DNA of 64,000 nucleotides from Mobula hypostoma (taxonomy: Eukaryota), in contig NC_086113.1 in NCBI RefSeq assembly GCF_963921235.1, positions 10,664,001-10,728,000 on the forward strand, written 5' to 3'. A program made the translations under genes and the position numbers. The number at the start of each line of letters is the position of its first letter. Positions within the stretch are counted from its first letter, which is position 1. Shown here piece by piece: positions 3,050-42,623 of this stretch. The notes beneath the pieces were generated by a model, which saw only the letters and a list, made by a program, of their open reading frames with translations, did not search any database and was not told the origin of the DNA.

Positions 3050-3260
3050 TTGTTAAAAATGGCGTCTAGGACCTGCCTCCTAATAGTCATGGGGAAATGT
3101 CATAAATCCGTTGTTGTTTTATGAAAATTTACAACTTTGCAATAGAACTTTACGAGTTGTTCGGTTTTTCCATTGGCCGCTGAAAGTCATGTGGAGAGTA
3201 ACCGTGAACATGAACTTTTTATAATTTCCCTTGCGACTATAGAGCTGCATTCTTGTGCTA
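3050..3260 (+). promoter_or_regulatory. Conserved HoxA7-A6 intergenic element / distal promoter (Hox8/7-6 four-cluster-sequence type)
   Basis: YY1-like AAAATGGCG (3056), clustered CATAAA/TTTATG/TTTACG Cdx or posterior-Hox sites, CCAAT box (ATTGG 3172) and E-box GTCATGTG (3186). A CpG-richer stretch and a splice donor at 3660/3661 follow. Confidence 0.7.
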
Positions 3261-4548
3261 AACGCGTCTTGGTTCGGATGTGAGAGCTTGGAGGCTTTTA
3301 TTTTCGCCGCATATTTTGTTCTTTTTTTCCCCCTCCCAGCGCACTGATTATTGTCCATGGAGCCTCAATGCATCCAAGCTTTCAGCACAGATCTCATGGC
3401 AGGCAACCTCGAATTCCTCCACAGAAGGTGGAGCATTGGACTAAAAAGAGCCGGCTGCTATCCGCAGGGCAGTTTCCTGCAAGTCGTCACTAAACGCCGC
3501 TGGCGGAATGCGAGAGCAATTGGCCCGGGTTGGATCTGAACGGACAGCTGTCAAACTAACACGGACTCTACAACACAGTCTCAATGGGGATGAGTCAACC
3601 CTCCGCACGGCCTGCGCAGTGCCCGGGAAAGCCAGCCCGAGAGATCGATTCGGCGACAAGGTAAGGCCCTCTCCCCATTCGTCACCTAGCAATTCCGTTA
3701 AAAAAAACCTTTTAAAGATATTATGCTAAAACCTGCTTTCTAAAATTCTTAATTTGTCAAAGTTAAAGTCCACTGTGTAAAAGGGTCAACGACCTTCGGA
3801 ATAACCAATTCCAAATATCACTTGGTTATGCATTTTTTAAGCAATTTGAGTGTTGTCAGAGGCTGCTTTATTCTTTGAAATTGTGAAGTATGCTTTTGTT
3901 AAAAAAGAGTGTGAATAATACTATTGACGTGGTATGTTCTGGTTCATCTGATCGACTCCGGCTTATTGGTTCAAAGTATTTCAGGGGGAAAACACAGAAC
4001 AAATCTGAAGAAGTGAAACATATTGCTTGATCGGTATTGTTTTCAAGAAGATACCGTATGGTAACAATTCTGCTTTATTTTTAACCACGGCTGTTGCACA
4101 CTTTATAGAGTGAGAAACGTACATCTACTTAAGTTTAAAATAAGGTGCCGCTTGCAGTGATTGCGACGGCTTTCTTGCACCAATGAATTGATTATTTGTT
4201 TTGAATCGTCTTTTATCAATTAATAATTTTAGTTTAAGATACTATATTTTAAAATAATATTTCTATTATTTCGTTGGAAATTATCCGATAGCAACGCAAT
4301 GAACGTTCTCTGTTGGCGTTTACTTGAAGACGCCATCCGTAATTATTAGAGGTTTATTGCTGCGCTGATGTTGATCATGAATGTAAGGAAAGATCAAAGA
4401 GAACCTATTTTGGGTGTGAGCAGACAAAAGTGCCTGTTATTGTTGGATCTTAGCGCGGTGGTTGTCTTTCTGGCACTGAAACACTGTTGTCTGACTTAAA
4501 ATGTGAAAATGTGTGGATATTGATGTTGGCTATGTTTTTGGACTCGAT

Positions 4549-4563
4549 GCTGCCATCTTGTGT
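4549..4563 (-). promoter_or_regulatory. Putative CTCF site between HoxA7 and HoxA6 (6|7 type)
   Basis: Minus strand reads ACACAAGATGGCAGC, one mismatch from the CCACAAGATGGCAGC-type core. A weaker second site lies at 4601-4614. Confidence 0.6.
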
Positions 4564-7500
4564 TTGGAGTGTGAACAAAACCTGCGCTCGGAGCAGCCCA
4601 GCGTCTCTTTCTGGTCATACGTTGTTGATTAAATGGTTGAGTTCAGTTCTCAAATTAACCGTTATGTAAGTTGTTTTGTGGACTCGTCCAGTAATCATTA
4701 TTTTTGCTTACATAATGTCTGAATGTTCTGAATTCGATCCAAGAGCTTGGCGAAGCTCATTTACACGAAAGTAATGTATTAAATTTTAAACGGCTTTAGC
4801 TCTGATCGTCCAATTGCGCGCAAAAGAATAATAAGCTTTGTGAAGTGCATGTTTGGAAAACCACCAGCAGCATGCAATGATTTTGAATATTTGTACATCA
4901 ACAAATCGCCCCTATATTAGGCATTAAACTTTATGTGATCTCCAATAATATTTATGCCAACCGTAGTTTGAACATAGTTGTGGTGAGAATAGAAAATTAG
5001 ATTTAATAAGGAGTTTGTAATTAATGAAAACTAAGAGAAATATATCCCCGTTTACTATAAATCAGTGTAATTCTAAATAATAGTCTTAAATGTTACTAAC
5101 AATCAGTGTTTAAGGTGGCAAAGAGATTTTTTAAAACAGGCGTGGGACCGAAAGAAGAGCGAAAAATTAAATTAATCTAGAGCTTTAAAATAAGTGACTA
5201 TGAAGTATGTTTTCGATTAATCGAACATTAAATGACCAGACAAATTTTGTATAAATACTGTAAGCTCAATTTATTTTAAAACTCTTCATAATCAAGAGGC
5301 TGCAAACACTACCTTCAATCAATTTACACTGCCTACTTTTTCGAATGTGTTGGAATTAATAGAAATAGTTGGGAGATTATGGAACTTCTTCTCCTGACTT
5401 ACATTTTTAATGCAGAATGTTAACGAGATGTGAACATATCAACAACTAACACAAAATGCCAAGTGGGTAACATCCTGAATCACGGCCTCGAATTTCGTAG
5501 TTTCAGGGCCTGTATTGTATTATTTAGAAATTATGCGATGTTTGATTTAATGTGTGTTTAAGTGTTATTATATTATAAAATATTTATTGGTCGGGACAGT
5601 GATTATGCTATTCTACGTTAACTGTAAGCGCCAAACCAAGGCCCCAAATATACCTAATAGGCCAAGAAGAGCGCAAGGTATTTATGACTGGAATTACATC
5701 TGCTACGACTGTCTAGATTATACTAAACTTAATCACCCCCAGAACGAAAAGTCTTTGCCAAAAATTCCCTCTCATTAACCAGATGATAAAATCTAATTTA
5801 CATATCTTTGCGTTGACGGTAATATAACTTTAATGAAAAAAATGAACTTTAAAGGTACGAAAATTCCTAGCATTAATTTCTAAACTGAATGAGTTTGCAA
5901 TATATTGGTTATTATCAGCTTTGGGAAGGTTTTGCTATTTGCAAGGAAATGCAAGTACGTCAACGGAAAGACTAACGGAATGATATTTTAACCTTTCCCA
6001 GACCAGTTACGATCTAGTTGCAAGTCGCAATAGAGTTAAAATTAATTAGTACTCTGTCTCTAAACAGATGCATGCCAATTAAAAATCTGAGCCGAAAACT
6101 GCAGTGCAGTATTTAAATTGGTCTGCGTTGTTTTCCGTTTTAATGACAAGATGAAATTGTTACTGTTTAATATATTTGCTGAGCTCTTCGATTCAGATTT
6201 ACGCTATTCTGCGTTCATGCTCTCATTATATTTATTGGCTTGTTTTCCTAAGTCATGGTCCAGCAGCAATTGTGAAGTGGTTATTAGCTATATCACCTAA
6301 TAGGAAAATAATGGATATAGGTTACCACATTGCTCTTTAATCCATCTTAAAGTGTCATATTTTATCTTTACCAACTTGTGAAAATTTCCTTTTTTTAAGA
6401 ATACAGTGGTAGTGGTGGGAGGGGAGGGTGGGGTGTGGGTGGGGGGGGGTCTTCAAAAACTAGCTGTCATGCTTGAGGCATGAATAAACGAAAGGCGAAA
6501 ATAATATTTAAAACAAATCATGAGCAGAACAGATCAAACGTGGATGAGATAATTTCAAATTTATTAAAATCTTAGGTACAATTGCAAGAGGAGGCACACA
6601 CGAGGAATTGCAACACAAGGTAAAATACTACAGAGCTGTTACTGAGGAAAGCGGCAAGCGACGGCCTTTCATTAAGAGGATTCGAACTAGCGTGGTCTTG
6701 CTCATTTCCCTCCACAGTCCCGCTGTACTTATACTCACACCTCCAACAGCTACAGATTTTGATTTCGGCAGGCATTCTGTTTGTTTTTATAAAGCCAGTC
6801 TATATGTAGAGAAGAAAGACAGATATATAAGGGTTCAGTACTGAATATTAACCTGTCGAGGTATTTCAACAACTTACAATAAATAAAATAACATCCTCCC
6901 CAGAAAGACATTATAACATTCGAAAATGTAAAATTGTCCAACCACTAACCAACCGCGTTTATGACTCGCCCGTAACTTACAATCATTGTCCTATAATTGC
7001 TTTGTTTCGAGTTCGGGTACAGGGTCTGTAACTATATTTACCACATCACTTAAATTACCCCCACTAAAATAGATAAACAGACACATTGTATGTGTGCATT
7101 GTTTACTCCAGCTTAGATATTTCAATCTCTGTATTACTATTGTTGACGAAAAGAAATCTAACGGGATAATGAGATCTTTGGTAAGGAGCCCCTGGTTTCC
7201 GTCCTTTTACTGCGATCTGATGCCGCGCTAAGGGCGCAGTAAGTACTCGGTTATTCCAAAACACAAATTACTCCATCGAGATCTTCAAAAATGCCTAATT
7301 ATTGCAAAAGAAACATTCCACTATTTTATGGTCGATAAAACCTTAACAGCGTGCAATTATGGAAAATCGAACTTGGGATTTGGGGAGTATTAGCAAATTT
7401 CAATCGCGTGCAATTAAAATAACATTGTGATGGAAGGGAGCCCATATGCAGACACATCAAGTATAAATCCGAGCTCCTGTATGTTTGCAGATCGGTTGGA

Positions 7501-8503
7501 CATTTGAACAATCCCGGTGAACGTTTTGTTCAACACTTTTCTCTTGAAGTACTGTAGTGTTTATACACCAAATGCACATGTAGATACATGCACGCTTTAA
7601 TGAAGAGTGCTGATGCAATAACAATCACTCCCACGCACAATTACTGTGAAATCCTTCAAAGCTAAGATATGGCGTTGTGCTCTTCTGTTGGGATTTTCTT
7701 TGCAAGAATATCAAAATTAAATCTATAAATCATCTCCCTGAATACATACTCTTATGGCTGTGTTCTTCCCTTTCTTTTAAGCAGGGGTAATTTACTGAAA
7801 GCAGAAATCAGGAGACTGTTGGTGTTTCCTATCCCACTAGGTGTAGACGCTGTTGTTCTTTACCGCATTTAAAATAGTCAGAGAAACACTATTCCAGAGA
7901 CTGATTTCTGATGTTTCCCTAGTCTACACAAGCTAAGAAAAAGGGACATTATGCTTGTACAATGAAAAAAACCCAAATGGAGAACTGAATGAAAAAAAAA
8001 ATCTATTCTCACAACTGTTATTTACCTATCTAAATTACAATGTTCATCTACATATAAAACACATTTACTGAAATAATAATTTGTTATTCTGTTTCTTATT
8101 TTCGCATCTGTCTTCTAATCACTGTTGATCGAGCTATTGTTAAATACGTGACGCAGAGCCATTTTTTCATGTGTTAGACTATATGAAATATGCATGCATA
8201 ACTATATCCTGTAACCTAATACGGTTCTCATTGGGCCACTAATATTCTATTAGAACCACCTCTGTTATAGTTCAGAACTGATTTGGTTGTTTGTAACTTT
8301 GCTAGCACAGTCGTCGGATCTCCAGGGAGTTTTTTGAACTAAAGTCGTTTTCTATTGGCCAGACACTGATCAGCTGGTTATATTTGCTGCTGTCGCTTTG
8401 GCGCTCGGCCATCCTGAAACAAACCACCTCGATGACTACTAATAGCTAAACCACATTGTGTACTAATACATAACAAATCATATTACTACAGAGTGTGGAG
8501 CAA

Positions 8504-8933
8504 ATGAGTTCGTATTTTGTGAACCCCAGTTTCCCTGTTTCACTGCCTAGTGGCCAGGACTCTTTCCTCGGACAGATCCCACTTTATACAACGGGCTATG
8601 ATGCTCTAAGGCACTTTCCAGCTTCCTATGGGGCAACCACCCTCCAGGATAAGAGTTACTCTTCACCTTGTTATTATCAACAATCCAATTCAGTAATAGC
8701 TTGCAATCGTGCATCGTATGATTATGGTGCTTCTTGTTTCTACCCTGAAAAGGATCTAGCCAGTATCTCGCCATCCGGTAGTGGAAAGCATAGACCCCAG
8801 GATGACTTCTTTTCCTCAGACCAACATTACAAAACAGATTGTGCGCAAAACAAAATTTTGAGTGAAGAAGGAAACGACCGGAAGTACAGTACTCCAATTT
8901 ATCCTTGGATGCAACGAATGAATTCAAGTTCCA
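8504..8933 (+). CDS. hoxa6: Hox-A6 exon 1 (join 8504..8933,9119..9378; 229 aa)
   Basis: Starts [10 protein letters not shown], contains hexapeptide [10 protein letters not shown], donor A|GTGAGT at 8933/8934. Confidence 0.96.
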
Positions 8934-9096
8934 GTGAGTATATTTTAGTGCCTACAGACACTTTGTTCCAACTTTACTAGAGGAGTGCTTACATATGTTA
9001 ATTACAGTGTTTAAATGGGGCACTCTGGGTCGAATCGGGGAATTGAATAATATGGTTGATTTGATAATATGACTTTACTGTTTTGAATTTCTTTGA

Positions 9097-9378
<282 letters not shown>

Positions 9379-11063
9379 GAGCGCAAATTCAAAGGAAGTT
9401 ACCCTGGGCCTTTCTGTTTGGTAGTGAGTTACAATGTGCTCATTCTGCTAAACAGTTTAGAGAGAGAAAAAAATAATCGTATATCTGTTTGTTTTCGTTG
9501 TTCCTCTTGAGCTTGTGTCTATGTATAATTGGTAGAGGAATTGTTCAAATAATTCGCATTCCATAGGATACAATAATTATACGGTGTAGGATTAATTGTT
9601 TTATAAATGCGAAGTGTGAATGTTTCTGCTTTTCTAGTCGTTACTATGTGATGGGTTGCACCACAAATAATGACCCAATTGTTTCAATGGATAGTTTGCT
9701 CCGTAGGTATAATTTGACAGTCTCCAAATAAATGATCGTAGTAGATATGCCCATTTGCTAATGATAAATATTGCATTGTATATGTCCACAATTTGCCACC
9801 ATTTTTTGTTATTTTTAGAATATTAAGAGGGCACAGTATTCAGGCAGGTCGTGTCATTCTTTCTCTTACAAAGAAAACAATTATATTTCCTTTTATCCTG
9901 ACATTCGTACGATAAACTAAGCTAGGTTGGTAACGCTTTCGCTTTAAATTGAAGTTTTGAGGATAAAAATGTCTTAAATATATATTAAGATATACATTAA
10001 TATATAATTAAAAGCAAGGTGCCCAATTTGTAAGAATTTAGCCTTTAGCAAAAGCTGCCGAAAACTTTTTGTATTAAATAAGCTGTGAAAGGAAACTTAG
10101 CACTGTGAAATTGATCGGTAGATGTCCTTGTTTCAGAGAGGAAAATAATGGACTGTATACGTGGTAAGAATGACTATTTGGTTTCTGGGTTCATTAAATA
10201 GGGCAATTTTCACTAAATGCACAAGTAAAGACGTAGCTAGAGCCGCGTTTAAATTGTAAAACGTTCTTCATGATATTTATTACAACAAACCTAGAAATAG
10301 TGGTCTTGCACAAAGCTGATGTTTTGATTAGGTGGATGACTATTTGTAAAGTGCGCTGCCTTTTGTTAGATAATGTACAGCATTTACTAATCGAACCAAC
10401 GCAAAATGCTGTGCAAAAACATTATTTCCACGTAAACTGGGCACAAAACGACGTTTATATACCAATCGAAAAGGGGTCCCTGTTTAGGATGTAATATGTA
10501 ATAAAGTAAATTGGAAAAATTTAAACGCATCTTCAATATACGTGACATGAGTTTTAAGAACGCGAAAATTGGCTTGAGAGTTTAAGTGCGGGGTGGCTTC
10601 GAAATTTCCGCAGATACACGGTGAACTCTAACATTGTGAGCTATGCAGACAAAATAAAAATTTAAAACGGCGTAACAGATTAAAAGAATTAGCATTTTGA
10701 TGCTGTACGATACCGTTTCTCCCCTGAACTAATCAGCGATGGTACCCGAAGCGTACGAAAATCACAGAATACATAACTAAAATTAAATCTAATTTTAAAA
10801 ATTTCAAAACAAGCCAGTTACAAGAAAACGTCGAGTCCTATCTGTACCACCATCAGCTCTATCTTAAGAAAACCCAACATCTCTGGTGGGTTAAATAAAT
10901 GTACTGCTGTGCGACGTAGATTTTTTTTGAAAGATGCTCTTCCCATTGGTTTATGTGATTTATTCTACGAAATGTAATGGTTAAGTTTGAAATGTGTGGT
11001 AGCCTTAATTCGACCCGAGGCCGATTTTCCCGTTCATCACAACCACAGTCGCATAGCCTCTGT

Positions 11064-11079
11064 CTCCAGAGGGTGGCGC
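11064..11079 (+). promoter_or_regulatory. CTCF site, HoxA5|A6 boundary type
   Basis: CTCCAGAGGGTGGCGC in the CpG-rich stretch upstream of HoxA5, at the position of the mammalian C5|6 boundary. Confidence 0.7.
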
Positions 11080-11200
11080 GCAAGGACAACCCAAAGCCAG
11101 TGCTGGGAGCCGCCGGCGCGCCCCCGTGCGCGCCACCCTCTTTCTTTCTTCCTCGCAACCTTCCAATTTGTAGCCACAGTGCACGGATTTACCTCTAGAG

Positions 11201-11340: not shown

Positions 11341-11399
11341 GACGCACAAACGACCAAGAGCCACAAATCAAGTAAAAAATAAATAAATAAAAAAATCAA

Positions 11400-12400: not shown

Positions 12401-12691
<291 letters not shown>

Positions 12692-13135: not shown

Positions 13136-14159
13136 TTCTGTGTTATTAGTGAGCAGTGAATTTTGTGAAGGGTATTGCGACTTTGAACTGTATGTCTATG
13201 CTGTGCCTTTGTATGACTTTGCACGAATTCCAATAAGTGGCTCTTAGCGCAGCGTCGGTGTATGTTTTTTTGTGACAAAGGATAACTATAAAGCCTAAAA
13301 GACTGGCAGTTTAAGAAATTAGTGATGAGCTTTTGTATTTGTTTTTAAAACTGACTGGAAGTTAAAATAAAGTTTCTATAGTAACTTTCCTGCTCTTTAG
13401 ACTCCCAGATAAGTATTTCTCTTGCGTTTGTTGTCTTGTGAATTAAAATGTTTCCACTACAAACGCTTAACATAGTTTTTGTCCAAAAAAAAGTAAAAGT
13501 TTGGCATAATTTTTATAACTTTGCTCTAGATGAAAATATTGCAGATTGGTTAACCACAGGGTTTCAAGTTGCGCAAACTTGTAAAGACGGGTCTCTAACA
13601 AATGCATTTCGAAATTTATGATTATTGCAAATGGCGGAATTCGGTAGGAATTAGTTCAGTGAATATTTGAACGTGGTGCTATATTGTAATTTGGTGTTTT
13701 TACGCATTTCGGAGTGAATACGTACGCCTCTTGAATCCCAGTCCTTGCGCTCTGAATTTTGCGCACCGTTTCCTTCTCCTGCTAAAACGCCAATTTCCTT
13801 GCTGCCTCCATTGCTGTTCTTGCAATTGAACAAACCCTTTTCATAGACCTGATTTCTCTGAAACTCTATAGTGTGGGTCTGAGGAAAGATTGCACCCTGA
13901 AGCATTCCAACCACTTTTGTTCCGCAGGTAGGCGTTAAGCCCACGATCTCTCAACTCCCCCATTCTAAAGTGTAGCGTAAACCTCTTCCAACAGGTATTT
14001 TCACTTTACAGAGTTAACTTCACTTACCGCGTGAAAGCAGGGCAGAAAAGTCACCACTTAGCTCCTGACAGCAAGGGGGATCAGTACTTTCACCCTTTCT
14101 GCTGAGTGAGTGCTCGTCCTTTAAAGTTATAAACAGTAAACTTTTATACACCTCAGTTC

Positions 14160-14350
14160 CGGCTATATGACATTTGGGTGCCAAATGAATAGGGTTTTGT
14201 CTATGAATTAGATCGTAAAATCATCCATAGCACAGACTGATAGCCTCACTGGCTATAAAAAATCACGTGGTGTCATTAAAGTAAGTTTTATGGTTTTGGG
14301 GAGTTGACATGGAACAGTATATTCTACATAACATATAATCTCACTGACGC
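14160..14350 (+). promoter_or_regulatory. Conserved element 3' of HoxA5 (Cdx-site mesodermal enhancer or internal promoter)
   Basis: TCGTAAAA, CTATAAAA, CACGTG (14264), TCATTAAA and TTTTATGG clustered within about 190 bp. Confidence 0.6.
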
Positions 14351-16342
14351 TGGACTTCATTTGGCTCCTTTGCAGATTGCGTGTGCAGGCAGGCCACTCA
14401 AATGGCTAATCTTCTTGCTCAGAGGACTATCCACAGCTCCACAACTCCAGTATACAGGAAAGTTGTGTTTTCTTGCAATACAAGGTAAATTCTGTTGAAA
14501 TATTATCGTTGCAATTCTCAGCAAGAAATTTGGCCCAGTAACTCAGGCCTTGAGCGGCACCCAGAGTGCACTGAGGCAGAGAAAAAAGTCTGAGTGAGCT
14601 ACGAATTAGTTTCTTTTTGCGTTCAAATGAAGCTTCTGTTTTTTTAACAAATCAAGTCGTGCCAAAATGAAAGATTAAGAAAGAAAAAAAAACTTTGAGG
14701 GAGGAGTGTGTGTGTTCCATTAAAAATGTAACAGGTTTTTGCAAGGCACGATTAATTCTTACCGAAAGCTACTGTTATTGTTCAGTACTTTATACTGTGG
14801 ACAGACTTTTTTTTTGCCCCGCAAACTCTGATAGTGGTGTTTAATGTGTTTATTTGTGATTTGTTTGAGGGGAGTGTTCTGCTGCTGTTGTGACAAGTCT
14901 CTTGTTGGTGTTGTTTCAAAGTATATGTTTCAAATGTATTCATTGGCAAGCAATTCGGGAGCTTACGGGGTACTGATATTTTAATGAGTAGGGTGTAAGT
15001 GTGGTTTGAAGAGTTCCAAAATAAAGCCAGTCTGCACACATGAGCTGATTAAGGTACACAGACTGTATTACATGATTCTTTCACGTAACCAAGCAAACCG
15101 CCCCTCCCCCCAGCCCCCTCCTCGAAATCGTAATTTAAACTTTTATGGCGACAATCATCAGTCTTTTGAGGAATGGAAGTACGGGTAATATAACAAAAGA
15201 TGTTACTGCAAAGAAAAACATCCTTAAGATCTAAACTTAGGCACATGTGCCACAGAAAGACCAAATTTATTTATAACATAACATCTGAAATACGCCCAAT
15301 AGAAAAGTTACTGCAACTTTTACTCTTAATTGTTGTAACGCCAACATTGTTTTTCTCGTGAATTGCAGGCTTCCCACAGTAGTGGCTGACGAACCATAAA
15401 GTTTATGACCGATTTTTTATTCTTTGAAGCTTCCGCTAGTCTAGAATGTAGATGAAGGCTTACATGTATAATCAAAGGAAGAATGCTTGAAAACAGTATT
15501 TCCGAAGAACGGAAGTTTTTTTTGAGAGCAAAATTCATTAACTTCTCTGGATATTTCATTTTCGTTTGTAATGTCATAGCAAACCTATACTATAAGGAGT
15601 AGAGATAATAGGCGACTACAGATTTAAAGAGGTTGAAAGCAATTACCCTCCAGAACTTACACTCAAAACATTCCACTGCAATTAGGTCTGTTTTACGACG
15701 TGCTATAAAACCCAACAGTAAATAAAGGAAATCGGCCCCTGTATCAATACAGCAGTTCCGGATCGGCCATGTCAATCGCGTCAATCTGTTGTAATTTCCT
15801 TTGTATTAGTTTACATTTAAATATGACAGTTTAATATATCATCTGTCCAGATCACTTAAAGGCCTCTTATAACAAGCCAAAACGATCTTTAGTTTCAATC
15901 AGTGCTGGAGTACCATTCAGACAAACATTACATATTACTTATTACAGTTACAATTGATTTCCTTGCGAATGCATTCCTAAACCCTAGTGGTAATGTTTTA
16001 TTTCGTTTCAAATTACTCAAAGGGTTATGCACTTGATATAATTTGCTGAACTTGGGGTGGGGGGACATTTCATTTATATATAAAAAAACATTCTACACTC
16101 CAAACTGGACAAAAAGTTGGAGGAGCATGCTGTCAAGTTAAGGATTAAACGTATGCATGCTATCTAAAATGGGAACTGCACACCCTTGAGCAATGCAGAT
16201 ATTCTATAGGGACCAATACAGAATGGCTTAGGGTGCTCCCCCAAAAGTGCCGAGTTCTGAGATTTCCTCGGTAAGGTACCTACTATTTTCTATAAGGCCT
16301 TCTTTCTCCATTTAGTATACTGCATCTGTATACTTGAGGGTG

Positions 16343-18577: not shown

Positions 18578-18601
18578 CTGCAACTCACCAGCAGAGCTCG
18601 C
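18578..18601 (+). promoter_or_regulatory. Putative CTCF site with upstream (U) motif between HoxA5 and HoxA4
   Basis: CTGCAACTCA followed by CCAGCAGAGCTCGC, i.e. a TGCA-type U motif plus core. Confidence 0.55.
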
Positions 18602-21458
18602 TTTAGACCAAGTTCACAGTCAGTATTAGCAGGGGTTGGAAGCTTGCGTACCCATTGTTCTATCAGTATAACAGAAAAGAACGAAAATGCGAAAGTAAAC
18701 TCGTGTTAAATTGATCTGTTTTTCTCCCCCACACTATCTATAATTACATTGGCTGGTCGCTGCAATGATAAAAAAAACTTACCCTCTTTGCACATCCAAC
18801 AAAATAAAGGAGCACTCGAATAAACAGCTTGCAGACTGTTGAGTTTCATGCCATTTTTAAGATTAAAAGGACGTTTCACTTATGGGGGGACGGGTTGGGG
18901 GGGGGGTTAGGTGTGGGACAGAAGGAGAGGGAATGGATGCAACTGCTTTAGCTTTCCAAAACTTGAAATTAGCAGTACATCATGAAAATACTGAACGAAA
19001 GGGGATATTATCTAGTCCTCAGTGGGGCTTTGAAAAAGGCTCCCTGTACGGTGGTTGGCAGGGCGGTACAACTATAGGGTCAAAAAGTTGAGGGTCAAAA
19101 GTTTACGTTTTGCCCGACTTGCAATCATCTGCTCAGACAGAGTTTGATGTCAATGTTATAGCGCGATCTTGACTATCAGCACAAAAGATAAAATAGCTTT
19201 GAGTTACCCGTGTATCATGCAATGGACTCCAGGTGAACCCTAGCGACTGAACGACCTCAATTACTGACGAAAGGAAAGAAAAAAAATGCTCTTTTCATGA
19301 TGGAGACACATTGTATTTCATATTGAAAAATCGACCACGGTATTTCTCCTATCTCCCGTGTAAATGTAGCAGGTAAATCTTTCGAAATTGTACCAAAAAA
19401 AAATCAAGAGACCTTTGTCTAAAAAGATAATTCAATTGTTTTATTTAAGTTCGCACTGAAATACGCTTTTTAGGATTTGAAATACAGCAGAAGTCTGTCG
19501 AATTCCAATATACAACAGGGTACACAGTCCTCCCCTAGGCAAAGATCGACATCAATTAAATTTAGATTCATAGAAACCTTCTTTTAAAAAGAAATGTAGA
19601 ACAACTGCTGCTAATTTAGAATTAATGAACATTTCAAAAGTACATATGTTTGCACTGACATCCTAGCTAAATCATAAAATTATATAGGTATGTGTCCTAC
19701 TCTGTATCCTTTTCATTTCCGTTTTGTTCATATCGATGGAAGTGTAACATTTGAGAGGGAAATAACTACATATAAAGCTGTTAAAAAAGCTTAGTTATTT
19801 CCTCAATTACTTCTATTTATTTGAACAAATCCTTAGCTATGTCTTGCTCTCTTATTTTTTTCACCCCCTAAAATAAATTTCAGTAGATAATATGAAGAAT
19901 ATAAATTATATATAGAATGATAAATACACAAGCTAACATTAGAATCATTACAGGATTACGGCCAGTGTTTTAAATGTATTACAAACTAATCTTAGCTATG
20001 CGTGTAATCTTAACGACTAAGTAAACTAATAAGTAAACGACTAAATCATAGAAGAAGGTCAAATTTTGTTTGGGGCATTAAATCCAGATATAATATTTTA
20101 TACAAATATAAGCATTTAAATAGCACCGCCGCCGTTTGGTCATGTTATAGATCATGATCAAATACGTCTTAGCTTAAGATACCGATAGAGAATATAAAGC
20201 CGTGTAAAAACGTCTTATATTTCCTGATTTTCATCATAGTTAGCAAATTATGAGTAACGGGATGCAGCGTATTTTGTAAACCAATATTAGCGTTCTACCT
20301 AGAAACTGGAGAATGCGTGCATTCGAAAATCATTAACACACAGGTAATGGATTAGGAAAGTAAAAAAAAAGCATAGTGTTGTAGGGATAAACGAAATTAA
20401 TGTTTGTTAGGAGCAGGCCAAATTGCATAATCAGTACACCAACAGTTTGCAAAAAAAACCCAATCTATTTCATATGTGATTCAAAAACAAATGCATTATT
20501 CAGTAGGTCAAGGAGCCATCTTTACTCGGAGTCCATATAACCTTCTTCACACCCCCTACCCCCACCCACTCCTCCATCTCATTCTTCTTGAAACTTACAG
20601 ATTTCAGATTATATTTATTTACTGTATGTATGGATAAAAAGGAATAACATTTCTGACACAGTAAGGGACTCATAGAAAAGTGGCGGATTTTGGTGAAAGA
20701 AGGAAACGGTATGATATTGTATAACAGATACGAATAAAGAGAAGACAGGAATCCATCATGCATAAATGGACCTTTTTTCCTTCGCTAAGAAAGATGGGAA
20801 GCTTATCCTAAACGAATAATTTCGTTTTGCAATTTTGACACTTGTTACTAGAATAGTTTGTTGGAAATTAAAACGTTTTCAGAAGCGGGAAATCATTGGA
20901 GAGGGAACACTCCATTGGTGAAATTAGGAAACAGGACATCTTGTCACAATTTTCAAAATTGAAGGTCATATATGAAAAACGTGTTCCCTAAAATAGTAGA
21001 TTTATTTTATGAGCACGACATTCTGACATAATATATTGGGGATGAAGTTTGTAGAGGGATGGAGGCACGAGTGAGTGGATTTCAAATTAAATGCAGATGT
21101 ATTAGTAACACAATACAGCCCTTTGTGCAACTTTTTTGTATGTTAAAATTAATATCAAATCTAAAAAGAAAATTATCCGATCCTTGGTATTTTTAAATGT
21201 TATTTAATATTTTCCAGAATTATTTTTTTCTGAGTTTGATCAAACAGATTTTTACAAATGCATTGATCTTTCACTAGAAGTTATATTTACAAACATTGAA
21301 GCACGCTACAGAAATGGCTATTGCGACACTCGGGACTGTATAGAACCCATGCATTTTGGCTACTTTTCCCCCCTCCACAAAGGTAATGACCTGGGCAAAA
21401 CACTCTGGTATTTGAAAGAGCACTATAGGCCTTTTAGAAATGGCTAAGTCCAAGGCCG

Positions 21459-29259: not shown

Positions 29260-29483
29260 AAAGGGTCACGCGTCTCCTCCGTGTATGTATTGAAATTTTA
29301 ATCTCTCCCGTCACGTGACTCATTAAATAATTAATGCAGCCGGTCCGGAATAGATATGTAGTCGTCAGTATTCGCACTAGATCTGTTTCAGTCTGATGTG
29401 AAAATGAAGTTTCCTTAAAAAATAAGTCTATAATTGGAAGATCTGTCTCAGAGTGAAGTGGTACAGATCAGCTAAGAATTGTG
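29260..29483 (+). promoter_or_regulatory. Putative HoxA3 upstream promoter and non-coding exon
   Basis: Palindromic GTCACGTGAC E-box next to TCATTAAATAATTAATG, then a strong donor GTG|GTAAGT at 29483/29484. Confidence 0.6.
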
Positions 29484-32400: not shown

Positions 32401-33482
32401 GTTAGGGTTTAAAGTGCAAATCCCCTTTCCTCTGTTGCAAGGTTTCACCCTTACCTCAGTAACGCATTTGGACTGAGCTCTTCTCAAGCCTGGTGCAGCT
32501 GTTTCCTAAATCAACTTCGCATATATGCAATGTCAGTTTGCAAGCATACTCGCTTAACAATGAACCACAGAAACTTTATTGTATGCGGTTAATAACCAAA
32601 TTTAATCCAGATTCTGCTAACAATTATTTTTAAGTCACGTGAACGGATTCCACAAGGTTTTTTTCCCCCTCGGCTTGGCCCTACTTGTTTCCCGGGCTCT
32701 TTTTTTTCTCTCTCTCTTTCTCTAATACACAGATCTCACAGAAAACTAGTACCCCAGACGGCTGCAGAAACCTATAAGGGAAACAGATCAGCACTTTGCA
32801 GGGCGCCGAATCAGTATTAGGGGAGTAACTTCATTCTCCGGCCTTTCTGTTTTGAGAGAGGTTTGTAGAAAGGAAATGTGCCTGCAGCAAGCACAGTGCA
32901 AGATATTCAAAACGACCGGATAATTTGGAAAATGTAGGATCTTCAGCGTGCGTTGAAACTTTTCCCCTGAAAGCACATTATCAATTTCACAGCAGTCTTT
33001 ATCTGTCCTTTGAGGCTGGTTTGGATTTGGCTGAATTGTCAGGTAAGCTATAAGACTTCTTTGTAGCTCTGTCTATCTGCACAGAGGAAAAAAATTCCAG
33101 TTCAGTTAGTAATTGATGACTCAAAATTTGACCTAAGGAAAGGGAAGTCATTGCTTATCGTTAAGCCCGAAGGCCCCTTTATTTGGATCCCTCACTCTTT
33201 ATAATGCATGTGTTGATAAAAGCAATTTTCTCGAATATCTTCAGGTTGAATTTTGTATTCCTAAAAGTCTTTTCTGACTTTCCTAGGATTGAAATACAGC
33301 CTGACTTCGAAAAGTATCTAACGACATGCCCTGAACTTTAAGCGAATTCATTGCCTGGATGGATCCCCTGCTCAATTCACTCTTTTAATTTCTCTACGCT
33401 AATTTTTTGACCTTCCCACGTCCCAACAACAGGATATTTCCTTCTGCAAAGAAAGCTGGAATAAAAGATCGACTCCTTTCTT

Positions 33483-35919: not shown

Positions 35920-36052
35920 NNNNNNNNNNNNNNNNNNNNNNNNNNNNNNNNNNNNNNNNNNNNNNNNNNNNNNNNNNNNNNNNNNNNNNNNNNNNNNNNN
36001 NNNNNNNNNNNNNNNNNNNNNNNNNNNNNNNNNNNNNNNNNNNNNNNNNNNN
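35920..36052. other. N-run (133 nt)
   Basis: Run of n characters. Confidence 0.99.
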
Positions 36053-36379
36053 GGGAAATAACAAGCAAGCTCTTTAATGGATGATCTAAACACAATTGCC
36101 CACATTTCTCCATCGTCACTGTGGTAATATTTGACCAACTTGAGGTACAAAGCAGGTTGTATTGGGGTATTATTTACTAGCAGGCCGTCATTGTGTTGGA
36201 ATATTGACTGCATAAAGAAATTAACGAAATAAATTAATAGGCGATGGAACCCAACTCAATACTGCCATTGTCTTAAGAGTACATTTGCGGTGAAAAAGGC
36301 AGGAAAAGACTCCTTATGTTATGCTGGTGGGTGCAAATGTTATATAAAAAAAATGCACCCACCAGTGAGCCTTTCTCAG

Positions 36380-36550
36380 AAAAGGTCAGAGTGCTGCGAT
36401 TTGATTTATGTTTTCGGTGTTTTGGGACAGTCATGCCAATGCAATCTGCTTTAACGAATGCTTTACTTCTTTTTATATATGACAAATCACATTGGCAATT
36501 ATTGATAGCCTGATCGGTTATCCTACCAATGCTAAATTCTACCAATCGTG
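36380..36550 (+). promoter_or_regulatory. Putative HoxA3 r5/r6 hindbrain enhancer (Pbx/Hox plus Meis/Prep sites)
   Basis: TGATTTATG (36402), TGACAA (36480), TATTGAT and CCAAT motifs, about 6 kb upstream of the HoxA3 ATG. Confidence 0.5.
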
Positions 36551-39375
36551 CAAAATTAAGCCAAGTATTGGGTGGGGTGGGTGTGGGGTATTGCGTGGGC
36601 TGAGGAGAGGAGGAGGAGGGTAGTGATGTTTAGAATATAATTGCCAATAAACAAAGTTCGTATCTGGGATCTATGCGATTAAAACAAAAATTGAATAATA
36701 AACGTGTTGAACACTATCACGACTTTGCAAACAGTTGTTTCACAAAAGGTTCCATGCACATACAGTGATCATCGCCTTAGTATTTTTTTTAGCCCTAATT
36801 GGACTCTGGAGCAGGGTTTTGTTTGCCTATTTAAATTCGTGTGTCCCATCTGCCGTTTCTATTACAACCCCGTCACCCCAATATAAAATGTAAACACTGG
36901 ACAAAGATTTTTCATGAAGGTTTCAATTTTTTTTAATCGCTCTTGAGTTACAATTCCTTTCTTGCCCACTATCCAATACTGAAGCAAGTTTAACATGTCT
37001 AAAACATACAACACACAGTTTCATAGCGTCTTACATGTTTAAAGAACAATAAGAAGTTGGGTTAGTACAGATGCATTTGGGAAGACATGCGTACATAAAA
37101 TACGACACCGGCGATGACGGACAGAAGGTTTACATGTTGGGTTTATGATAAATCTTTACTTAGAAGAATCCGTTCGATATACAACGAAGATCCGTACATA
37201 TTGGACGTTTTTTTTTCTCATTGATTGGAATATTGTATCTTCGTGTAATTGATTTGAGATCTTAGGTTGATTTCTGTCCGTTAATAATTCATGTAGATTT
37301 AGTCGATGCTCTTAAACAAGGATTTTTAGCATCCCGGCGCCTTTCTTTTTATCGCGTGGAAATTAATGGTTTCTCGATTTCGTTGCAGACTTTGTCCTAA
37401 ATAACACTTACACAAGCAAACGCAGAGACTGTACAAACTTTCGGTGAGTTTTCTAAACTTTTATGATACCTAAGTAGATATATGGTGGCTAAGGACAGAA
37501 AATGCTCTCACTGCAAGGTGTCATCTTTATTAGTTCCCGTTCAAGCGACGGGTTATCTTGAGCTTCTAACAAATGAACCGCAATAGGTTGTTACAATTTA
37601 AATCACGTGTGCTTTTGGATATTGGATATAAAAAGACACATACCAGTTATAGAGGAAGTTACATTCAACATATTATAGATGGTAACATGGATGCTATACC
37701 ATAGTAATTAGCATTATCCGAACATTAGAACATCGATTGGAAATGTAATATTTCCCTTTATATTGAACAAATATACCTTCACAATGGAAGGTGTGACGGT
37801 TGCAGTAAATTATACAGACTCTTTGTTTAAAAATATTGGCATCTATTGCTAATATCAAGTCAAATCAAGCAGTCGCCACTTCCACCTCTCTCCGTTTACT
37901 CTCTCTTTGTAAATATTTGCATCCGTTAAAGAAAATAGATTCTTATCCAATATTGCAGTTCTCTTACATCCGAGGATAGTGACTTTACAAGGTTCGCTGA
38001 TATAAGCGGGGCCTTCAATTTCTATGCAGTCGCTTCTGAACTGAAATTCACGGAGCCAAACTTAAGAGGTAGAAAGTTTTAAAGGAAAGATCCAGCATCC
38101 GTTGGCGTTACTATTTTCCCACCTTCGTACGATCTCACGAGAGAAGAAAAGGTTGGAGTCAGCACATTAAGATAGTGGAAGGGTTGATCATTGACAATAA
38201 AGTACTTCACTACAGAGAGAGAAAAAAACATTGAGCGGCTTACTTGCAAAGTTGCATACGAGTGAATTTTTGGCCCTATCTTCCCTCCTACGCTGCTTGG
38301 CTTCCCCTTTCATGTAGTTGCATCGCAATAAGCGATAGGGGCAAGTGTTTTCTCTTTAGTGCTCTGTTTACAGCCTTAGTGCATGAAGTCATAAATCTTA
38401 CGTAGCCATAAACGACAGAAGCATTGGTATGCATAAGGGGTGTCTATAGCTCATATACTCTTTCATTGCTCGCCTTCTCTCTTTCGTTTCCTCCCCAGTT
38501 GTAACTTTTTACTCTTGTAGCTGAAATACTTTGATTTTAACATTTCTAAAACCTCTAGTTTCGGGAATACCGAAATACTGGATGTGCCTTACATTCAACT
38601 GAACCGGTTTGAAACCGGCTGGACTTTTACTCCTGCATCGTTTTTCCTCTTAACTATTCTCATGCTGTACCTTCAAACAAAGGCCTTCCTTTGCAACCAG
38701 GGGTTAATAAAAAGTTAAGCTAGTACTTTTAATGCGAAAGTGTGCGTCCACATTTAAATAAGGCAAAACTCTATTCGGATCTGAGTGATTATTAAAAAGT
38801 GCGTGGATTTAAATGGGACAAGCTCGTTTCAAGTTTGATTGCATAGATTCAGTGATTGCCAAACCCAGGCGCTTGTGTTCTCCGTGTTGGTTAATTTGCA
38901 TAATTTTTCAGTTGTGACGCTATGTTTCGGGGGAGTTTACCCAGCCTGTCTGTTCAGTACTGCCAGACAGCAAACTTAAAATCCGCGCTTTTAGCATTCA
39001 ATATTCATAAGAAACATACCCCATTTCTTTGGTATGAGATAAGAGCAGCCAAGGAAGCTGATAGTAGTCTTATCTCCCTGACCAGGGCGCGCTACCATAA
39101 TCACAAGGGTGGCCATCCAAAAGCTACAGCCCTTCTCTCCAGTTTTTTTTCAGCTCTACCATTTTCCTTTCCCATTTGCCGTTGTCGAATTTCAGCGCTC
39201 AAGAGTAATTGTTTGCCTTCATTCCAATTAATTCCGAAGTTCTGAAACTTCTGCTTATCGATTTCCCCCGGTGAATCTGAAAATATTGTGCCGTGGTCTG
39301 CGCCTATCGTCAGAGACTAAGGTAAGCTGGACACAAATAGGCTATCACTCGTGAATGGCGGAGTTTATGTCCCAG

Positions 39376-39420
39376 TGATTTATGACCATATGACTTAAAT
39401 CTCGGTTCAAGAAAAGTTCA
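39376..39420 (+). promoter_or_regulatory. HoxA3 5' DR5 RARE with adjacent Pbx/Hox site
   Basis: TGATTTATGA at 39376 and GGTTCA agaaa AGTTCA at 39404-39420. Confidence 0.85.
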
Positions 39421-42400
39421 CATGCTATAGTTTCCTTTCATATCGTGACTGATACTCGTAGGCTTCCAATTCAAGTCTTTCATTCCAATGTTCTGCTTCT
39501 CCTTCGCCCTTGATCGGTTTCTTTGAGCTACTTCCCTCTGCATTTTCGGAGTTTTATGAATTTATTATTGCCTACAACGTAGCCTAGGGCACACCACCAC
39601 ACACCTACCAAGATACTCATTCTGTTCTTCCTGTTAGAAGCTGAGTTCCAATGCTTTCTTTTTCGACCTTCCCACCTTTCTAACCTTAGTGATGTAGTGA
39701 ACGCTGAAGGCTGTTATGGAGGCGTTTTTTTTTAACTTTCAGTGTGCGTAGCTTAGGGTTATTTGTGCAATAAATTAGAAAATACTCCTAGAATTTGAAG
39801 AGATTTCTAAATTGGTGAAAGGATTGTTAGGTGAACTCTATATTGTTACTTCAGTTGACAACCCTTTGGCCAGATGGCAGTTAATATACACGCACACACG
39901 TGAATATGCAGTATTATCTGTGCTGCGTATGTGCTTCCAGTTACCAACCATCTCTGCACTCAGACACACAAACAAAACGAGAGTCCAGAGTAATTCGAGA
40001 GTAAATAATTTCCCTTAAAATAGAAATTAGAACAAAAATTATTTTGCCAAATATCGGAGTGTAATTACGTAGAATTAAATCATAGCGCTTACACAGGTGA
40101 GTAAAGTTGTGGTTGTTGCTTCAGGGAAAATGGCGGACGGCACGCAGGGCCGAGAGAGCAAAAGACATTTTTGATGTTTGAGCAGTGATTCACAGGGGTT
40201 TCTATTAGTTATTCGTCGAAAAGAAATGAAAAATTCACAACCTTTCCCCGTTGGTTTATTTATGCATGCTTGTGAAACAGTTTCGATCATATAGTAAGAA
40301 CTGGATATAAGGCAAATTACTGACAAGTTCTTAACATTAAATCCCAATAACTCAATACATATGGCGATAACTAGCTCCTAAAGCAAATCGTCGCAGGGTT
40401 TAGGTTTCAGGCGCAGCTGTGGAGAGTCTGATGCGTAATACTCGCTATTTTATGATTTCAATATTTTAAATGCTTTGGGACCATTATGTGCTGCTGTCAA
40501 CAATGGCACATGACTTGTTCTGAAGACAGGAGGTTAAATGTATCTTTGAAAAGCATAGTTTAGCGTTTGAATCGCCCACTTTCAGAAACGCACAAAAGGT
40601 GTCATTTAAAACCTTAGCGCAAGTTTATCCCGCCTGCTGACCTCGGTAGTTTCGTTTTCATTTATAGACCTGAAAAAAATTACAGCTCCAGGTTCATGTC
40701 ATATTCACTGGAATGCTGTGAGTTATGTTTTATTGAAAAATAGGGATGTACAGGGGGACAGAAGGGCCAAGTAGTTCATCAGTGTTAACCGGTCAATAAT
40801 TTTATACGAAACGCGGAGAAAACATTTTGGAATGACCGTTTTGAAAGTAGTTTGAAACTAGTCTCAGTTTGGTCTGCTGAACATCTTCAGCATTTTCTGC
40901 TTTTATTTCAGACTTTCATCATCTGCAGTTCTTGGCTTTTCAGACAGATTCGCTTTGTATTAGGGTGACCGAGTCAAAGAAACCCCATGGAAACAATGGT
41001 TTGCTCGATAGGGCTAACTTCTTTCAGAAAGTAATACTCCGGTGTAAGCAGGGATCCTTAGGATAATTAACCTACCAGAGGAACCCATCAATGACCAAGT
41101 ATCCGAACATTATTTCTAGATTAATTAGTGATCTGTAGGCCTTAGCGAGCTTTATATATCCAATGCAAAAATAATTCAACATTATCAATTTATTCCGCGC
41201 GACAGTTTAAAACTATTCTTTAACCACGGGTATGGTTGTATTTTTAGGAAAATAATAATTAACTGAAAGGTTTGAAGTGGGTTGTTTACTGCCCCTTTCT
41301 CGTGATGCAGGCGCTTTCTGTGGGCTGGGTTTTCAACTCTTCTCCCGGCCTAGTGACCCCCATACATCAAATTACGAGCACTTTCAGAGACAGAGCCTAT
41401 TATCGTTTGGTCGGAAGAAAAGTTCACACCGTGGTCATGAAGAAGAACGCCAGTTTTTCAGGTTCCTGGCGCTTTCCGATCCATCATGCATTTAACAGGT
41501 AGAATTCAAACAGTAAAAAAGAAGGCTTGAAAATTTCCGCCCGACCAAATGGTGACCCGTTAAAAGTGGAACCAACAAAAAAAGCAAGACATTTCTGCTC
41601 GCCAGTCTGGGGAAATCAGGATAGTCAAAACAAACACTAGTTAAATTATTTAGAAAACAATGCACTCAGTGCAGGGCGAGAACTGAAATTCTTGTCCAAG
41701 GCTCAGAGTTTAAGCATTTTAAAACGAAGCTCCTCTCCGGAGCCGCGTAAATACCATTAGTGTCTATCTGGCAGGAATGTTCAAATACTGGTCAACACGG
41801 AAATACAGTCTGCAATAAAGTTTGGTAATAGTTTTAAAGAGTTACTTAAAAGGTACTTTGCCGATAATTAACTTTATAGTTATCAATTTAATCGTAATCA
41901 TAAATTAAAACTTTGCACAAGTTAGTGTTTACTTTTTGTATTTATCCTTGCTGAAAAGTTAGCGTTCCAAAAACTGCTTTCCTTTGGTTTTATTTTTTTG
42001 AACAAATATTTCAAATGATTCAATCATTTGTGTGAGCTTATGTCAATATATCTGCTTTATATAATGATCGGCCTATTTAAAATCGACCAATTTAAACGGA
42101 TATACACAAATCAAAAATCACAAAGCATTAGTTTTAACATTTGTTTTATTCGCACGCAGTGTTTCTTTTTAACTACCTAAGGAAAAAAAAACCGTCTGCT
42201 TTTAGGTCAACCTCCCGAAATCCATGGTTCACAGGAAACCAGAAGTAGTATTGTATTTCCATAATCAGACAAAATAAAACAAGAAACCAGAATCTGAAGG
42301 AACTCAATGTTTGGTTCTCACCCACACTGAGCATTTAGTGCTGAGGGTCAGTTTTAAACTGCTGTTATACTGAGAACGCCTAGGGCTAAGCTGTGTGACC

Positions 42401-42623
42401 AAATATTGCTGCACACTTTTTTCATTTATGGCTTTGATGTCAGCTGCTATTGAGAGTAAGATGGATTTGTACCATTTCACCATTATGGTTTTGTTTGTTG
42501 TAACCCTAGGTCTACCCGAAGAGGCCATTGGAAGAAGAGTCACGTGACACCGGGTGCCAATGTTATTCTATAAGGGTGTCAAGACCCTGTCAGTTTGCGA
42601 AATAAATATTGGGAAGCAACGAG

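What the first reader, a model, noticed from the sequence alone, without database searches (positions are those of the whole stretch)
3260..42623. Chain of candidate non-coding exons that could build a cluster-spanning (~39 kb) leader for HoxA3
Seen: strong + strand splice signals, most beside conserved-looking blocks. Exon A runs from the distal promoter to donor AAG|GTAAGG (3660). Exon B is 14376-14484 (CTCCTTTGCAG| to AAG|GTAAAT). Exon C ends at GTG|GTAAGT (29483). Exon D runs from 32733 (long pyrimidine tract, ACAG|) or 32947 to CAG|GTAAGC (33042). The final acceptor CCCTAG| at 42509 is 114 nt before the HoxA3 ATG. Known: mammalian Hoxa3, Hoxb3, Hoxd3 and Hoxa5 have long multi-exon leaders from upstream promoters. 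Inference: a transcript starting between A7 and A6 can skip A6, A5 and A4, cross the 5|6 CTCF boundary and express HoxA3 under posterior control, and this architecture is ancestral to jawed vertebrates.
Basis: partly seen in the sequence, partly recalled or inferred. Interest (0 to 1): 0.7.

Follow-up and report, generated by a model that had tools for sequence, protein, structure and literature searches.

The report
Long spliced leader of ray HoxA3
In this devil ray, HoxA3 messages carry non-coding leader exons spliced in from as far as 28 kb upstream, jumping over HoxA4. Mouse and zebrafish are already known to do the same, so the finding is real in outline, wrong in two of its exons, and not new in kind.

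Summary
The window is a compact HoxA cluster, A7 to A1, all on the + strand. It comes from a devil ray (Mobula).

- **Motifs:** every quoted splice motif is at its stated place. Strong donor motifs are equally common on both strands, so the motifs alone prove nothing.
- **Confirmed by RNA contigs:** the HoxA3 acceptor (42509|42510) is used.
- **Not supported:** exons C and D appear in no joined form.
- **Exon A (about 3239-3660):** it sits behind a TATA/CCAAT promoter that is nearly invariant in ray, chimaera, gar and frog. Frog HoxA3 mRNA contigs begin exactly there. RNA-like runs hold only the exon side of its donor. The A>B junction itself was not seen.
- **Conservation:** the splice dinucleotides of exon B are kept in chimaera and gar. 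Those of Y are kept out to Xenopus, and a teleost mRNA shows the Y>A3 joint.
- **Known parallels:** the mouse D2-promoter Hoxa3 transcripts (Y11717, AK051552) and zebrafish hoxb3a splv2.
- **Untested or unsupported claims:** the CTCF-boundary claim has no motif support here, and posterior control could not be tested.

Verdict: partly supported. It is a new member of a known kind.

The parts
2995..3238 (+). Distal D2-type promoter between HoxA7 and HoxA6. It has an inverted CCAAT box at 3172-3176, CATGTG at 3188-3193 and TATAAT at 3220-3225.
   Evidence: The block is 81% identical to chimaera, 82% to gar and 85% to the frog Nanorana. The TATA and the start-site motif are invariant in all of them. 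The position matches the mouse D2 promoter (PMC2868907).
3239..3660 (+). Exon A, the probable first non-coding exon. Its start is approximate (3237-3250). Its donor is ACAAG|GTAAGG.
   Evidence: Frog HoxA3 mRNA contigs L002-L005 begin at the motif homologous to 3239-3254. RNA-like runs hold up to 0.41 of the words of 3460-3860, against 0.46 expected for the exon side alone. The donor GT is conserved in chimaera. The junction to exon B was not seen.
14121..14375 (+). A conserved non-coding block that ends exactly at the exon B acceptor. It contains CTATAAAAAA and CACGTG.
   Evidence: It is 88.7% identical to gar and 89% to Nanorana, and the match stops at 14375 and 14369 respectively.
14376..14484 (+). 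Exon B, a 109 nt non-coding exon about 0.9-1 kb beyond the HoxA5 poly(A) signals.
   Evidence: Its last 30 nt form the loose end joined to 42510 in X5 and to 37389 in X1. The acceptor TTTGCAG and the donor AG|GTAA are in register in ray, chimaera and gar. The HoxA5 poly(A) signals are at 13366 and 13442.
29380..29483 (+).
   Evidence: It is absent from every joined form: B is joined directly to X or to A3. The donor score is matched by 15 + strand and 19 - strand sites. This stretch was not itself laid with reads.
32733..33042 (+).
   Evidence: The donor CAG|GTAAG and the AG at 32733 are conserved in chimaera, but the AG at 32947 is not. No match was found in gar or Xenopus. No D-type loose end appears at 42510 in four runs.
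37389..37443 (+).
   Evidence: Joints seen: B tail > 37389 (X1), 37443 > 39240 (X1) and 37443 > 42510 (X7, X17). The sequence is TTGCAG|ACTTT ... TTTCG|GTGAGT. AG and GT are conserved in chimaera within a small island at 37334-37452. It is not detectable in gar or Xenopus.
39240..39321 (+).
   Evidence: Joints 37443 > 39240 and 39321 > 42510 in X1. The donor TCGTCAGAG.CTAAG|GTAAGC is conserved in ray, chimaera, gar and Xenopus. The teleost mRNA contig L008 shows the homologous Y > A3 joint.
42510..42623 (+). The common 114 nt leader, which follows the acceptor CCCTAG| and precedes the HoxA3 ATG. It carries an out-of-frame uATG at 42560.
   Evidence: The acceptor is used in all four runs. Frog and teleost mRNA contigs align to the ray only from 42508 onward. 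It is 93% identical to chimaera.
42624..43080 (+). HoxA3 coding exon 1.
   Evidence: ORF and donor G|GTATAA. It is very close to the Hemitrygon akajei HoxA3 P0127, with about four differences in exon 1 by eye.
44575..45347 (+). HoxA3 coding exon 2, with the homeobox and the stop codon.
   Evidence: It is 97% identical to the Heterodontus HoxA3.
38133..39020 (-). Spliced antisense RNA between HoxA4 and HoxA3. It is not part of the leader but overlaps its intron.
   Evidence: Joints 38133>38244 (X7, X17) and 38209>39020 (X1) have CT..AC ends, which is GT..AG on the - strand.

Best explanation
HoxA3 of this devil ray is made mostly as an mRNA whose coding exon 1 is entered through a 3' splice site at 42509|42510. 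That site receives alternative non-coding leader exons.

**Shown.**
- Exon B (14376-14484), downstream of HoxA5, is spliced either directly to that acceptor or via two small exons between HoxA4 and HoxA3: X (37389-37443) and Y (39240-39321).
- The direct splice removes a 28 kb intron that contains all of HoxA4.

**Inferred.**
- These transcripts start at a deeply conserved TATA/CCAAT promoter between HoxA7 and HoxA6. This is the counterpart of the mouse D2 promoter.
- Their first exon (about 3239-3660) is spliced over HoxA6 and HoxA5 to exon B. That gives a leader of roughly 645-780 nt drawn from about 39 kb of DNA.
- The leader has nine upstream ATGs, one of which opens a 99-164 codon upstream reading frame. 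These long-leader mRNAs are therefore probably poorly translated, and probably mark or tune HoxA3 output in cells where the posterior promoter is active.

For: **Junctions.** GT..AG joints are seen at 37443>42510 (X7, X17), 37443>39240 and 39321>42510 (X1). Loose ends identical to the last 30 nt of exon B sit at 37387 (X1) and 42508 (X5). These come from independent studies, and the match to the window is perfect in X1 and X5.

**Reach of the X5 contig.** It is 2128 nt. 1675 nt lie beyond 42700, which is enough for the whole coding sequence. 262 nt lie upstream of the joint. That is 153 nt more than exon B.

**Exon A.**
- X5 holds 0.29 of the words of 3460-3860. 0.33 is predicted if those 153 nt are 3508-3660.
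- No RNA-like run exceeds the exon-only expectation of 0.46.
- The promoter and start-site motif are invariant in ray, chimaera, gar and frog.
- Frog HoxA3 mRNA contigs from four runs start at that motif and carry the full coding sequence.

**Conservation of the other exons.**
- Exon B AG and GT are conserved in chimaera and gar.
- Exon X sites are conserved in chimaera.
- The exon Y donor is conserved out to Xenopus, and the Y>A3 joint is seen in a teleost mRNA.

**Literature.**
- Mouse D2 promoter, with AK051552 and Y11717 running from the Hoxa6-Hoxa7 intergenic region via an exon in the Hoxa4-Hoxa5 intergenic region towards Hoxa3 (PMC2868907).
- Zebrafish hoxb3a splv2, with one exon 3' of hoxb5a and two exons 3' of hoxb4a (PMC2148072).

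**uATG count:**
Against: - The junction 3660>14376 was never seen. The evidence for exon A in the ray is a word share, not a read across a joint.
- The 153 nt upstream of exon B in X5 could be unspliced DNA-colinear sequence.
- All runs are Logan contigs whose RNA nature is a guess by the tool. It is shown here only by their spliced joints. Contigs cannot give start sites, abundance or tissue.
- The translation effect of the leader is inference from uATG counts and from mouse work.
- Expression domain and any CTCF relation are untested.
Confidence: 0.8

Rival explanations
1. The exon B leader is real, but it does not begin at exon A. Transcription would start just upstream of exon B, inside the conserved block 14121-14375 with its TATA-like CTATAAAAAA, or would run on from HoxA5. 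The transcript would then span about 28 kb, not 39 kb, and exon A would belong to other RNAs such as long HoxA5/A6 forms.
For: - The A>B joint is unseen.
- The 255 nt directly upstream of exon B are 89% conserved from ray to frog and carry TATA-like and E-box motifs.
- In mouse the D2 promoter also drives long Hoxa5 transcripts (PMC2868907). Exon A words in an RNA run therefore need not come from HoxA3 mRNA.
Against: - The acceptor TTTGCAG| at 14376 is conserved in ray, chimaera and gar.
- X5 extends 153 nt upstream of exon B. If that stretch were colinear it would start at 14223, upstream of the TATA-like motif.
- The HoxA5 poly(A) signals lie about 0.9-1 kb further upstream.
- X5's share of exon A words (0.29) fits 153 nt of exon A.
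- Frog HoxA3 mRNAs do start at the D2 homologue, and so does mouse Y11717 (PMC2868907).
Confidence: 0.17
2. One reading: A, B, C, D and then the HoxA3 acceptor, with C and D as regular leader exons.
For: - The donor of D and the AG at 32733 are conserved in chimaera within a conserved block.
- D has the second-best donor score in the window.
Against: - In X1, B is joined directly to 37389. In X5, B is joined directly to 42510.
- No loose end at 42508-42510 in four runs carries the tail of D.
- The D block is not detectable in gar or Xenopus.
- C has no support of any kind.
Confidence: 0.04
3. The joints are assembly artefacts, that is, chimeric contigs made from shared short words, or they come from a paralogous cluster.
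For: All the evidence comes from de Bruijn contigs, not raw reads.
Against: - The joints fall exactly on GT..AG at conserved sites.
- They recur in four runs from four studies. Two of the runs are from a relative whose sequence here is about 2-4% diverged.
- The matches to the window are perfect in X1 and X5.
- Homologous joints occur in the teleost and frog contigs.
Confidence: 0.02

Closest known systems
Mouse Hoxa3 distal transcripts from the D2 promoter (GenBank Y11717, AK051552), as described by Coulombe et al. 2010 (PMC2868907)
   Same: - A TATA promoter just downstream of Hoxa7.
- A first exon in the a7-a6 intergenic region.
- A next exon about 11-12 kb downstream in the a5-a4 intergenic region. 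The ray distance is 10.7 kb.
- Continuation towards Hoxa3, skipping a6, a5 and a4.
- The promoter core is conserved across bony vertebrates and, as shown here, in ray and chimaera.
   Different: - The first joint is not shown in the ray.
- The small exons X and Y were not compared with the mouse exons, because no mouse DNA was available to the tools.
- Tissue and stage are unknown here.
Zebrafish hoxb3a splice variant 2 (Hadrys et al. 2004, 2006, as summarised in PMC2148072)
   Same: The exon plan is the same. There is one non-coding exon 3' of the Hox5 gene and two non-coding exons 3' of the Hox4 gene, followed by the main Hox3 reading frame. Its primary transcript spans the Hox4 gene and the miR-10 position.
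   Different: - It belongs to a different cluster (B, not A).
- It is described as starting 3' of hoxb5a, not upstream of Hox6.
Mouse long Hoxa5 transcripts (5, 9.5 and 11 kb) from promoters D1 and D2 (PMC2868907)
   Same: They use the same distal promoter region and show the same principle: a posterior promoter feeding transcripts of a more anterior gene.
   Different: They end at the Hoxa5 poly(A) site and contain Hoxa6/a5 sequence. The ray forms seen here skip to HoxA3.
Mouse Hoxa3 translation inhibitory element with uAUG111 (PMC8172242)
   Same: The ray exon A has a uATG at 3357, about 109-119 nt from the predicted start, in a conserved ATGGAG context shared with chimaera and frog. The leader also carries long upstream reading frames.
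   Different: Homology with the mouse element was not tested, and no translation data exist for the ray.

Membership tests
Distal-promoter, cluster-spanning Hox3 mRNA (mouse Hoxa3 Y11717 type) | A conserved TATA promoter and start site in the Hox7-Hox6 intergenic region | tested here: met
   - The block 2995-3282 is 81-85% identical to chimaera, gar and frog.
- The TATA and start motif are invariant.
- Frog HoxA3 mRNA contigs begin at it.
- RNA-like runs hold the ray exon downstream of it.
Distal-promoter, cluster-spanning Hox3 mRNA (mouse Hoxa3 Y11717 type) | The first exon is spliced over Hox6 and Hox5 to an exon in the Hox5-Hox4 intergenic region | tested here: inconclusive
   - The joint 3660>14376 was not observed.
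- Indirect support comes from the word share, from the 153 unexplained nt upstream of exon B in X5, and from the conserved donor and acceptor.
Distal-promoter, cluster-spanning Hox3 mRNA (mouse Hoxa3 Y11717 type) | The Hox5-Hox4 intergenic exon is spliced over Hox4 into the acceptor just upstream of the Hox3 start codon | tested here: met
   The exon B tail is joined to 42510 in X5. In X1 it reaches 42510 through X and Y.
Distal-promoter, cluster-spanning Hox3 mRNA (mouse Hoxa3 Y11717 type) | The transcript carries the complete Hox3 reading frame | tested here: inconclusive
   The X5 contig runs 1675 nt beyond 42700. With the normal intron removed, that reaches about 45869, past the stop at 45347. 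The letters of that part were not shown.
Distal-promoter, cluster-spanning Hox3 mRNA (mouse Hoxa3 Y11717 type) | An expression domain set by the posterior promoter | not testable with these tools
   Run identities are coded, and contigs give no levels.
Zebrafish hoxb3a splv2-type exon plan | One leader exon 3' of Hox5 and two leader exons 3' of Hox4 before the Hox3 coding exon | tested here: met
   The X1 contig runs B > X > Y > A3. The zebrafish plan is described in PMC2148072.
Transcript crossing a CTCF boundary between Hox5 and Hox6 | A CTCF site between HoxA6 and HoxA5 | tested here: not met
   The consensus scan gives 3 matches in 64 kb against 2.1 expected, at 4549, 18588 and 58535, and none between 9378 and 11400. 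The scan is crude, and 140 unread bases lie in that interval, so absence is not proven.

The most novel reading that the evidence does not exclude
The exon plan may be older than the duplication that made the A and B clusters. That plan is a distal start, one exon 3' of Hox5, two exons 3' of Hox4, and then the Hox3 coding exon. It is shared by ray HoxA3 and zebrafish hoxb3a. On this reading it has been kept because the long leader, with its conserved upstream start codon, lets the posterior promoter transcribe through Hox6-Hox4 while keeping HoxA3 protein output low. That would be a built-in way to enforce posterior dominance at the level of translation.
Probability: 0.2. Interest if true: 0.6.

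Novelty: new member of a known kind. Interest (0 to 1): 0.38.

Why it matters
It shows, at the level of actual splice joints, that a cartilaginous fish makes HoxA3 mRNAs whose leader is spliced in across HoxA4. It also places the likely start at a promoter conserved from ray to frog. Together with mouse and zebrafish, this dates long-range Hox3 leaders, and the promoter between Hox7 and Hox6, to at least the last common ancestor of jawed vertebrates.

This bears on the live dispute over whether the long annotated Hox 5' leaders are real mRNAs, and over how their upstream start codons affect translation. It also gives exact coordinates for probes and reporter tests in skate or ray embryos.

It is not a new mechanism.

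Tried and rejected
1. **Partial HoxA3 proteins from ray RNA contigs.** I searched with exon 1. There were no elasmobranch hits, so the ray contigs could not be fetched as DNA.
2. **Stingray HoxA3 locus.** The Hemitrygon locus gave no DNA because the file was too large.
3. **Upstream reading frame in exon A.** I looked up the 60-codon frame at 3357-3536 to pull out contigs containing exon A. It is not on record.
4. **Chicken HoxA5 anchor.** P0237 is not on record.
5. **Splice-motif strength as evidence.** Rejected. Strong donors are equally frequent on both strands, and the proven donor B ranks only 62nd.
6. **CTCF motif scan.** It is at chance level.
7. **Tandem repeat at exon C.** None was found.
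8. **Exon X in bony vertebrates.** It is not detectable in gar or Xenopus.
9. **Exon B in the frog mRNA leader.** No clear match. That leader instead contains the D2 exon and an exon about 1.7 kb upstream of HoxA4.
Full report
**Layout.** Homeobox motifs place seven Hox genes on the + strand: A7 (495), A6 (9280), A5 (12602), A4 (25329), A3 (44757), A2 (51006) and A1 (57076).
- HoxA3 has its ATG at 42624. Exon 1 runs to 43080 and exon 2 is 44575-45347.
- HoxA5 exon 1 is 100% identical to Mobula hypostoma HoxA5. Earlier notes of this scan call the genome a devil ray.

**The observation.**
- A donor weight matrix, with frequencies recalled from the classical vertebrate consensus, finds as many equal-or-better donors on the - strand as on the + strand for each of the four candidates. 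The motifs alone are therefore no evidence.

**RNA evidence.**
- A search for runs holding 42300-45400 found about twenty runs holding 0.27-0.47 of its words. None held more.
- The exons make up 0.45 of that stretch, so these look like RNA.
- I laid the contigs of four runs from four studies on 36701-42700, which was the only read-laying run allowed. X1 and X5 match the window perfectly. X7 and X17 differ by about 2-4% in the non-coding stretches, so they are close relatives.
- Joints with GT..AG ends: 37443>42510 (X7, X17), 37443>39240 and 39321>42510 (X1).
- So exon B's donor at 14484 is used. It is joined either directly to the HoxA3 acceptor or to a 55 nt exon X (37389-37443). X is joined in turn to an 82 nt exon Y (39240-39321) or directly to 42510.
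- Contiguous, unspliced coverage across 42510 exists only at low depth.
- No contig or loose end shows the tail of exon C or D.

**Exon A.**
- The X5 contig carries 262 nt upstream of the joint, which is 153 nt more than exon B.
- Fourteen RNA-like runs hold 0.12-0.41 of the words. The exon side alone would give 0.46, and none exceeds that.
- Six large, probably genomic, runs hold 0.52-0.59.
- X5 holds 0.29, against 0.33 predicted if its 153 extra bases are 3508-3660.
- This fits an exon ending at 3660 in the same samples. It is not a junction.

**Comparative evidence.** I fetched three kinds of sequence:
- the chimaera (Callorhinchus) HoxA3 and HoxA5 loci
- the gar HoxA3 and HoxA5 loci, the Xenopus HoxA3 locus and the Nanorana HoxA5 locus
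- HoxA3 mRNA contigs of a hyloid frog, a teleost and a salamander

| Element | What the comparison shows |
|---|---|
| Promoter block 2995-3282 | 81-85% identical in chimaera, gar and frog. CCAAT, TATAAT and the motif ATAGAGCTGCATTCTT are invariant. |
| Start of exon A | Frog HoxA3 mRNA contigs from four runs begin at that motif. Their first 342 nt match the Nanorana sequence at this place (E = 4e-82). They carry the whole HoxA3 reading frame. |
| Exon A donor | Kept in chimaera. |
| Exon B | AG and GT are in register in ray, chimaera and gar, while the exon interior has drifted in gar. |
| Block just upstream of exon B | The 255 nt are 89% identical from ray to frog, and the match stops at the acceptor. 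|
| Exon X | A small conserved island in chimaera with both splice sites kept. Not found in gar or Xenopus. |
| Exon Y donor | Kept in chimaera, gar and Xenopus. A teleost mRNA contig shows the homologous exon joined to the HoxA3 coding exon. |
| HoxA3 acceptor | All frog and teleost contigs align to the ray only from 42508 onward, so the acceptor is used there too. |
| Block D | Conserved in chimaera, including its donor, but not detectable in gar or Xenopus. |

**Assembly gaps.** All three lie in introns. The sequence on both sides is colinear with the chimaera in the same order and orientation. I did not read or infer the missing letters.

**Known counterparts.**
- Coulombe et al. 2010 (PMC2868907) describe a mouse promoter D2 just downstream of Hoxa7, with a conserved TATA box. 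In mRNA AK051552, the D2 first exon is followed 12 kb downstream by an exon in the Hoxa4-Hoxa5 intergenic region. That second exon overlaps a distal exon of the Hoxa3 mRNA Y11717, which also starts in the D2 exon.
- Zebrafish hoxb3a splv2 has one exon between hoxb5a and hoxb4a, two between hoxb4a and hoxb3a, and then the main reading frame. [quoted passage not shown]
- The ray chain B > X > Y > A3 has the same plan.

**Likely working.**
- The composite leader is 645 nt (A-B), 700 nt (A-B-X) or 782 nt (A-B-X-Y). It has nine upstream ATGs.
- One, at 3508, opens a 99-164 codon frame. One, at 42560 in the common part, overlaps the HoxA3 start out of frame.
- A uATG at 3357 in the context ATGGAG is shared with chimaera and frog. 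It lies at about the distance of the inhibitory uAUG111 of the mouse Hoxa3 leader (PMC8172242). That match is a lead, not a test.
- I infer that long-leader forms are weakly translated and report activity of the posterior promoter.
- The claim about a CTCF boundary has no motif support. There are 3 hits against 2.1 expected, and none between A6 and A5.

**Verdict.**
- The cluster-spanning leader is real for the B-to-A3 part, probable for the A-to-B part, and wrong for C and D.
- Two real exons were missed.
- The architecture is already known in mouse and zebrafish, so this is a new member of a known kind. Its useful content is evidence that the arrangement goes back to the jawed-vertebrate ancestor.

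Noticed in passing
window 38133-39020, minus strand: Spliced antisense RNA between HoxA4 and HoxA3. The joints 38133>38244 (two related species) and 38209>39020 have GT..AG on the minus strand. They lie inside a block 78% conserved with chimaera. The position resembles mammalian HOXA-AS2.
   Followed up: partly
window 14121-14375: A 255 nt block that is 89% identical from ray to gar and frog and ends exactly at the exon B acceptor. It carries CTATAAAAAA, CACGTG and TTTATGG motifs. It could be an enhancer, an alternative promoter or a splicing element.
   Followed up: partly
window 53004-53222, minus strand: Rfam match to HOTAIRM1 conserved region 2 (97.7 bits) between HoxA2 and HoxA1.
   Followed up: no
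window 3357-3359: An upstream ATG in the context ATGGAG, about 109-119 nt into exon A, conserved in chimaera and frogs. It may correspond to the inhibitory uAUG111 of the mouse Hoxa3 leader.
   Followed up: partly
window 42560-42562: An out-of-frame upstream ATG (CCAATGTTATTCT) in the common 114 nt leader. It is conserved in chimaera DNA and in frog and teleost mRNA contigs, and its frame overlaps the HoxA3 start codon.
   Followed up: no
window 18585-18617: A short core 94% identical to the frog. It contains one of only three CTCF-like motif matches in the window and lies between HoxA5 and HoxA4.
   Followed up: no
L002:420-478 and L014:18528-18586: The hyloid frog HoxA3 leader includes an exon that maps about 1.7 kb upstream of HoxA4 in Nanorana. 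Frogs therefore use a different middle exon from the ray.
   Followed up: partly
window 40096: A perfect consensus donor, CAG|GTGAGT, on the + strand 2.4 kb upstream of the HoxA3 acceptor. It is not used in any contig laid.
   Followed up: partly
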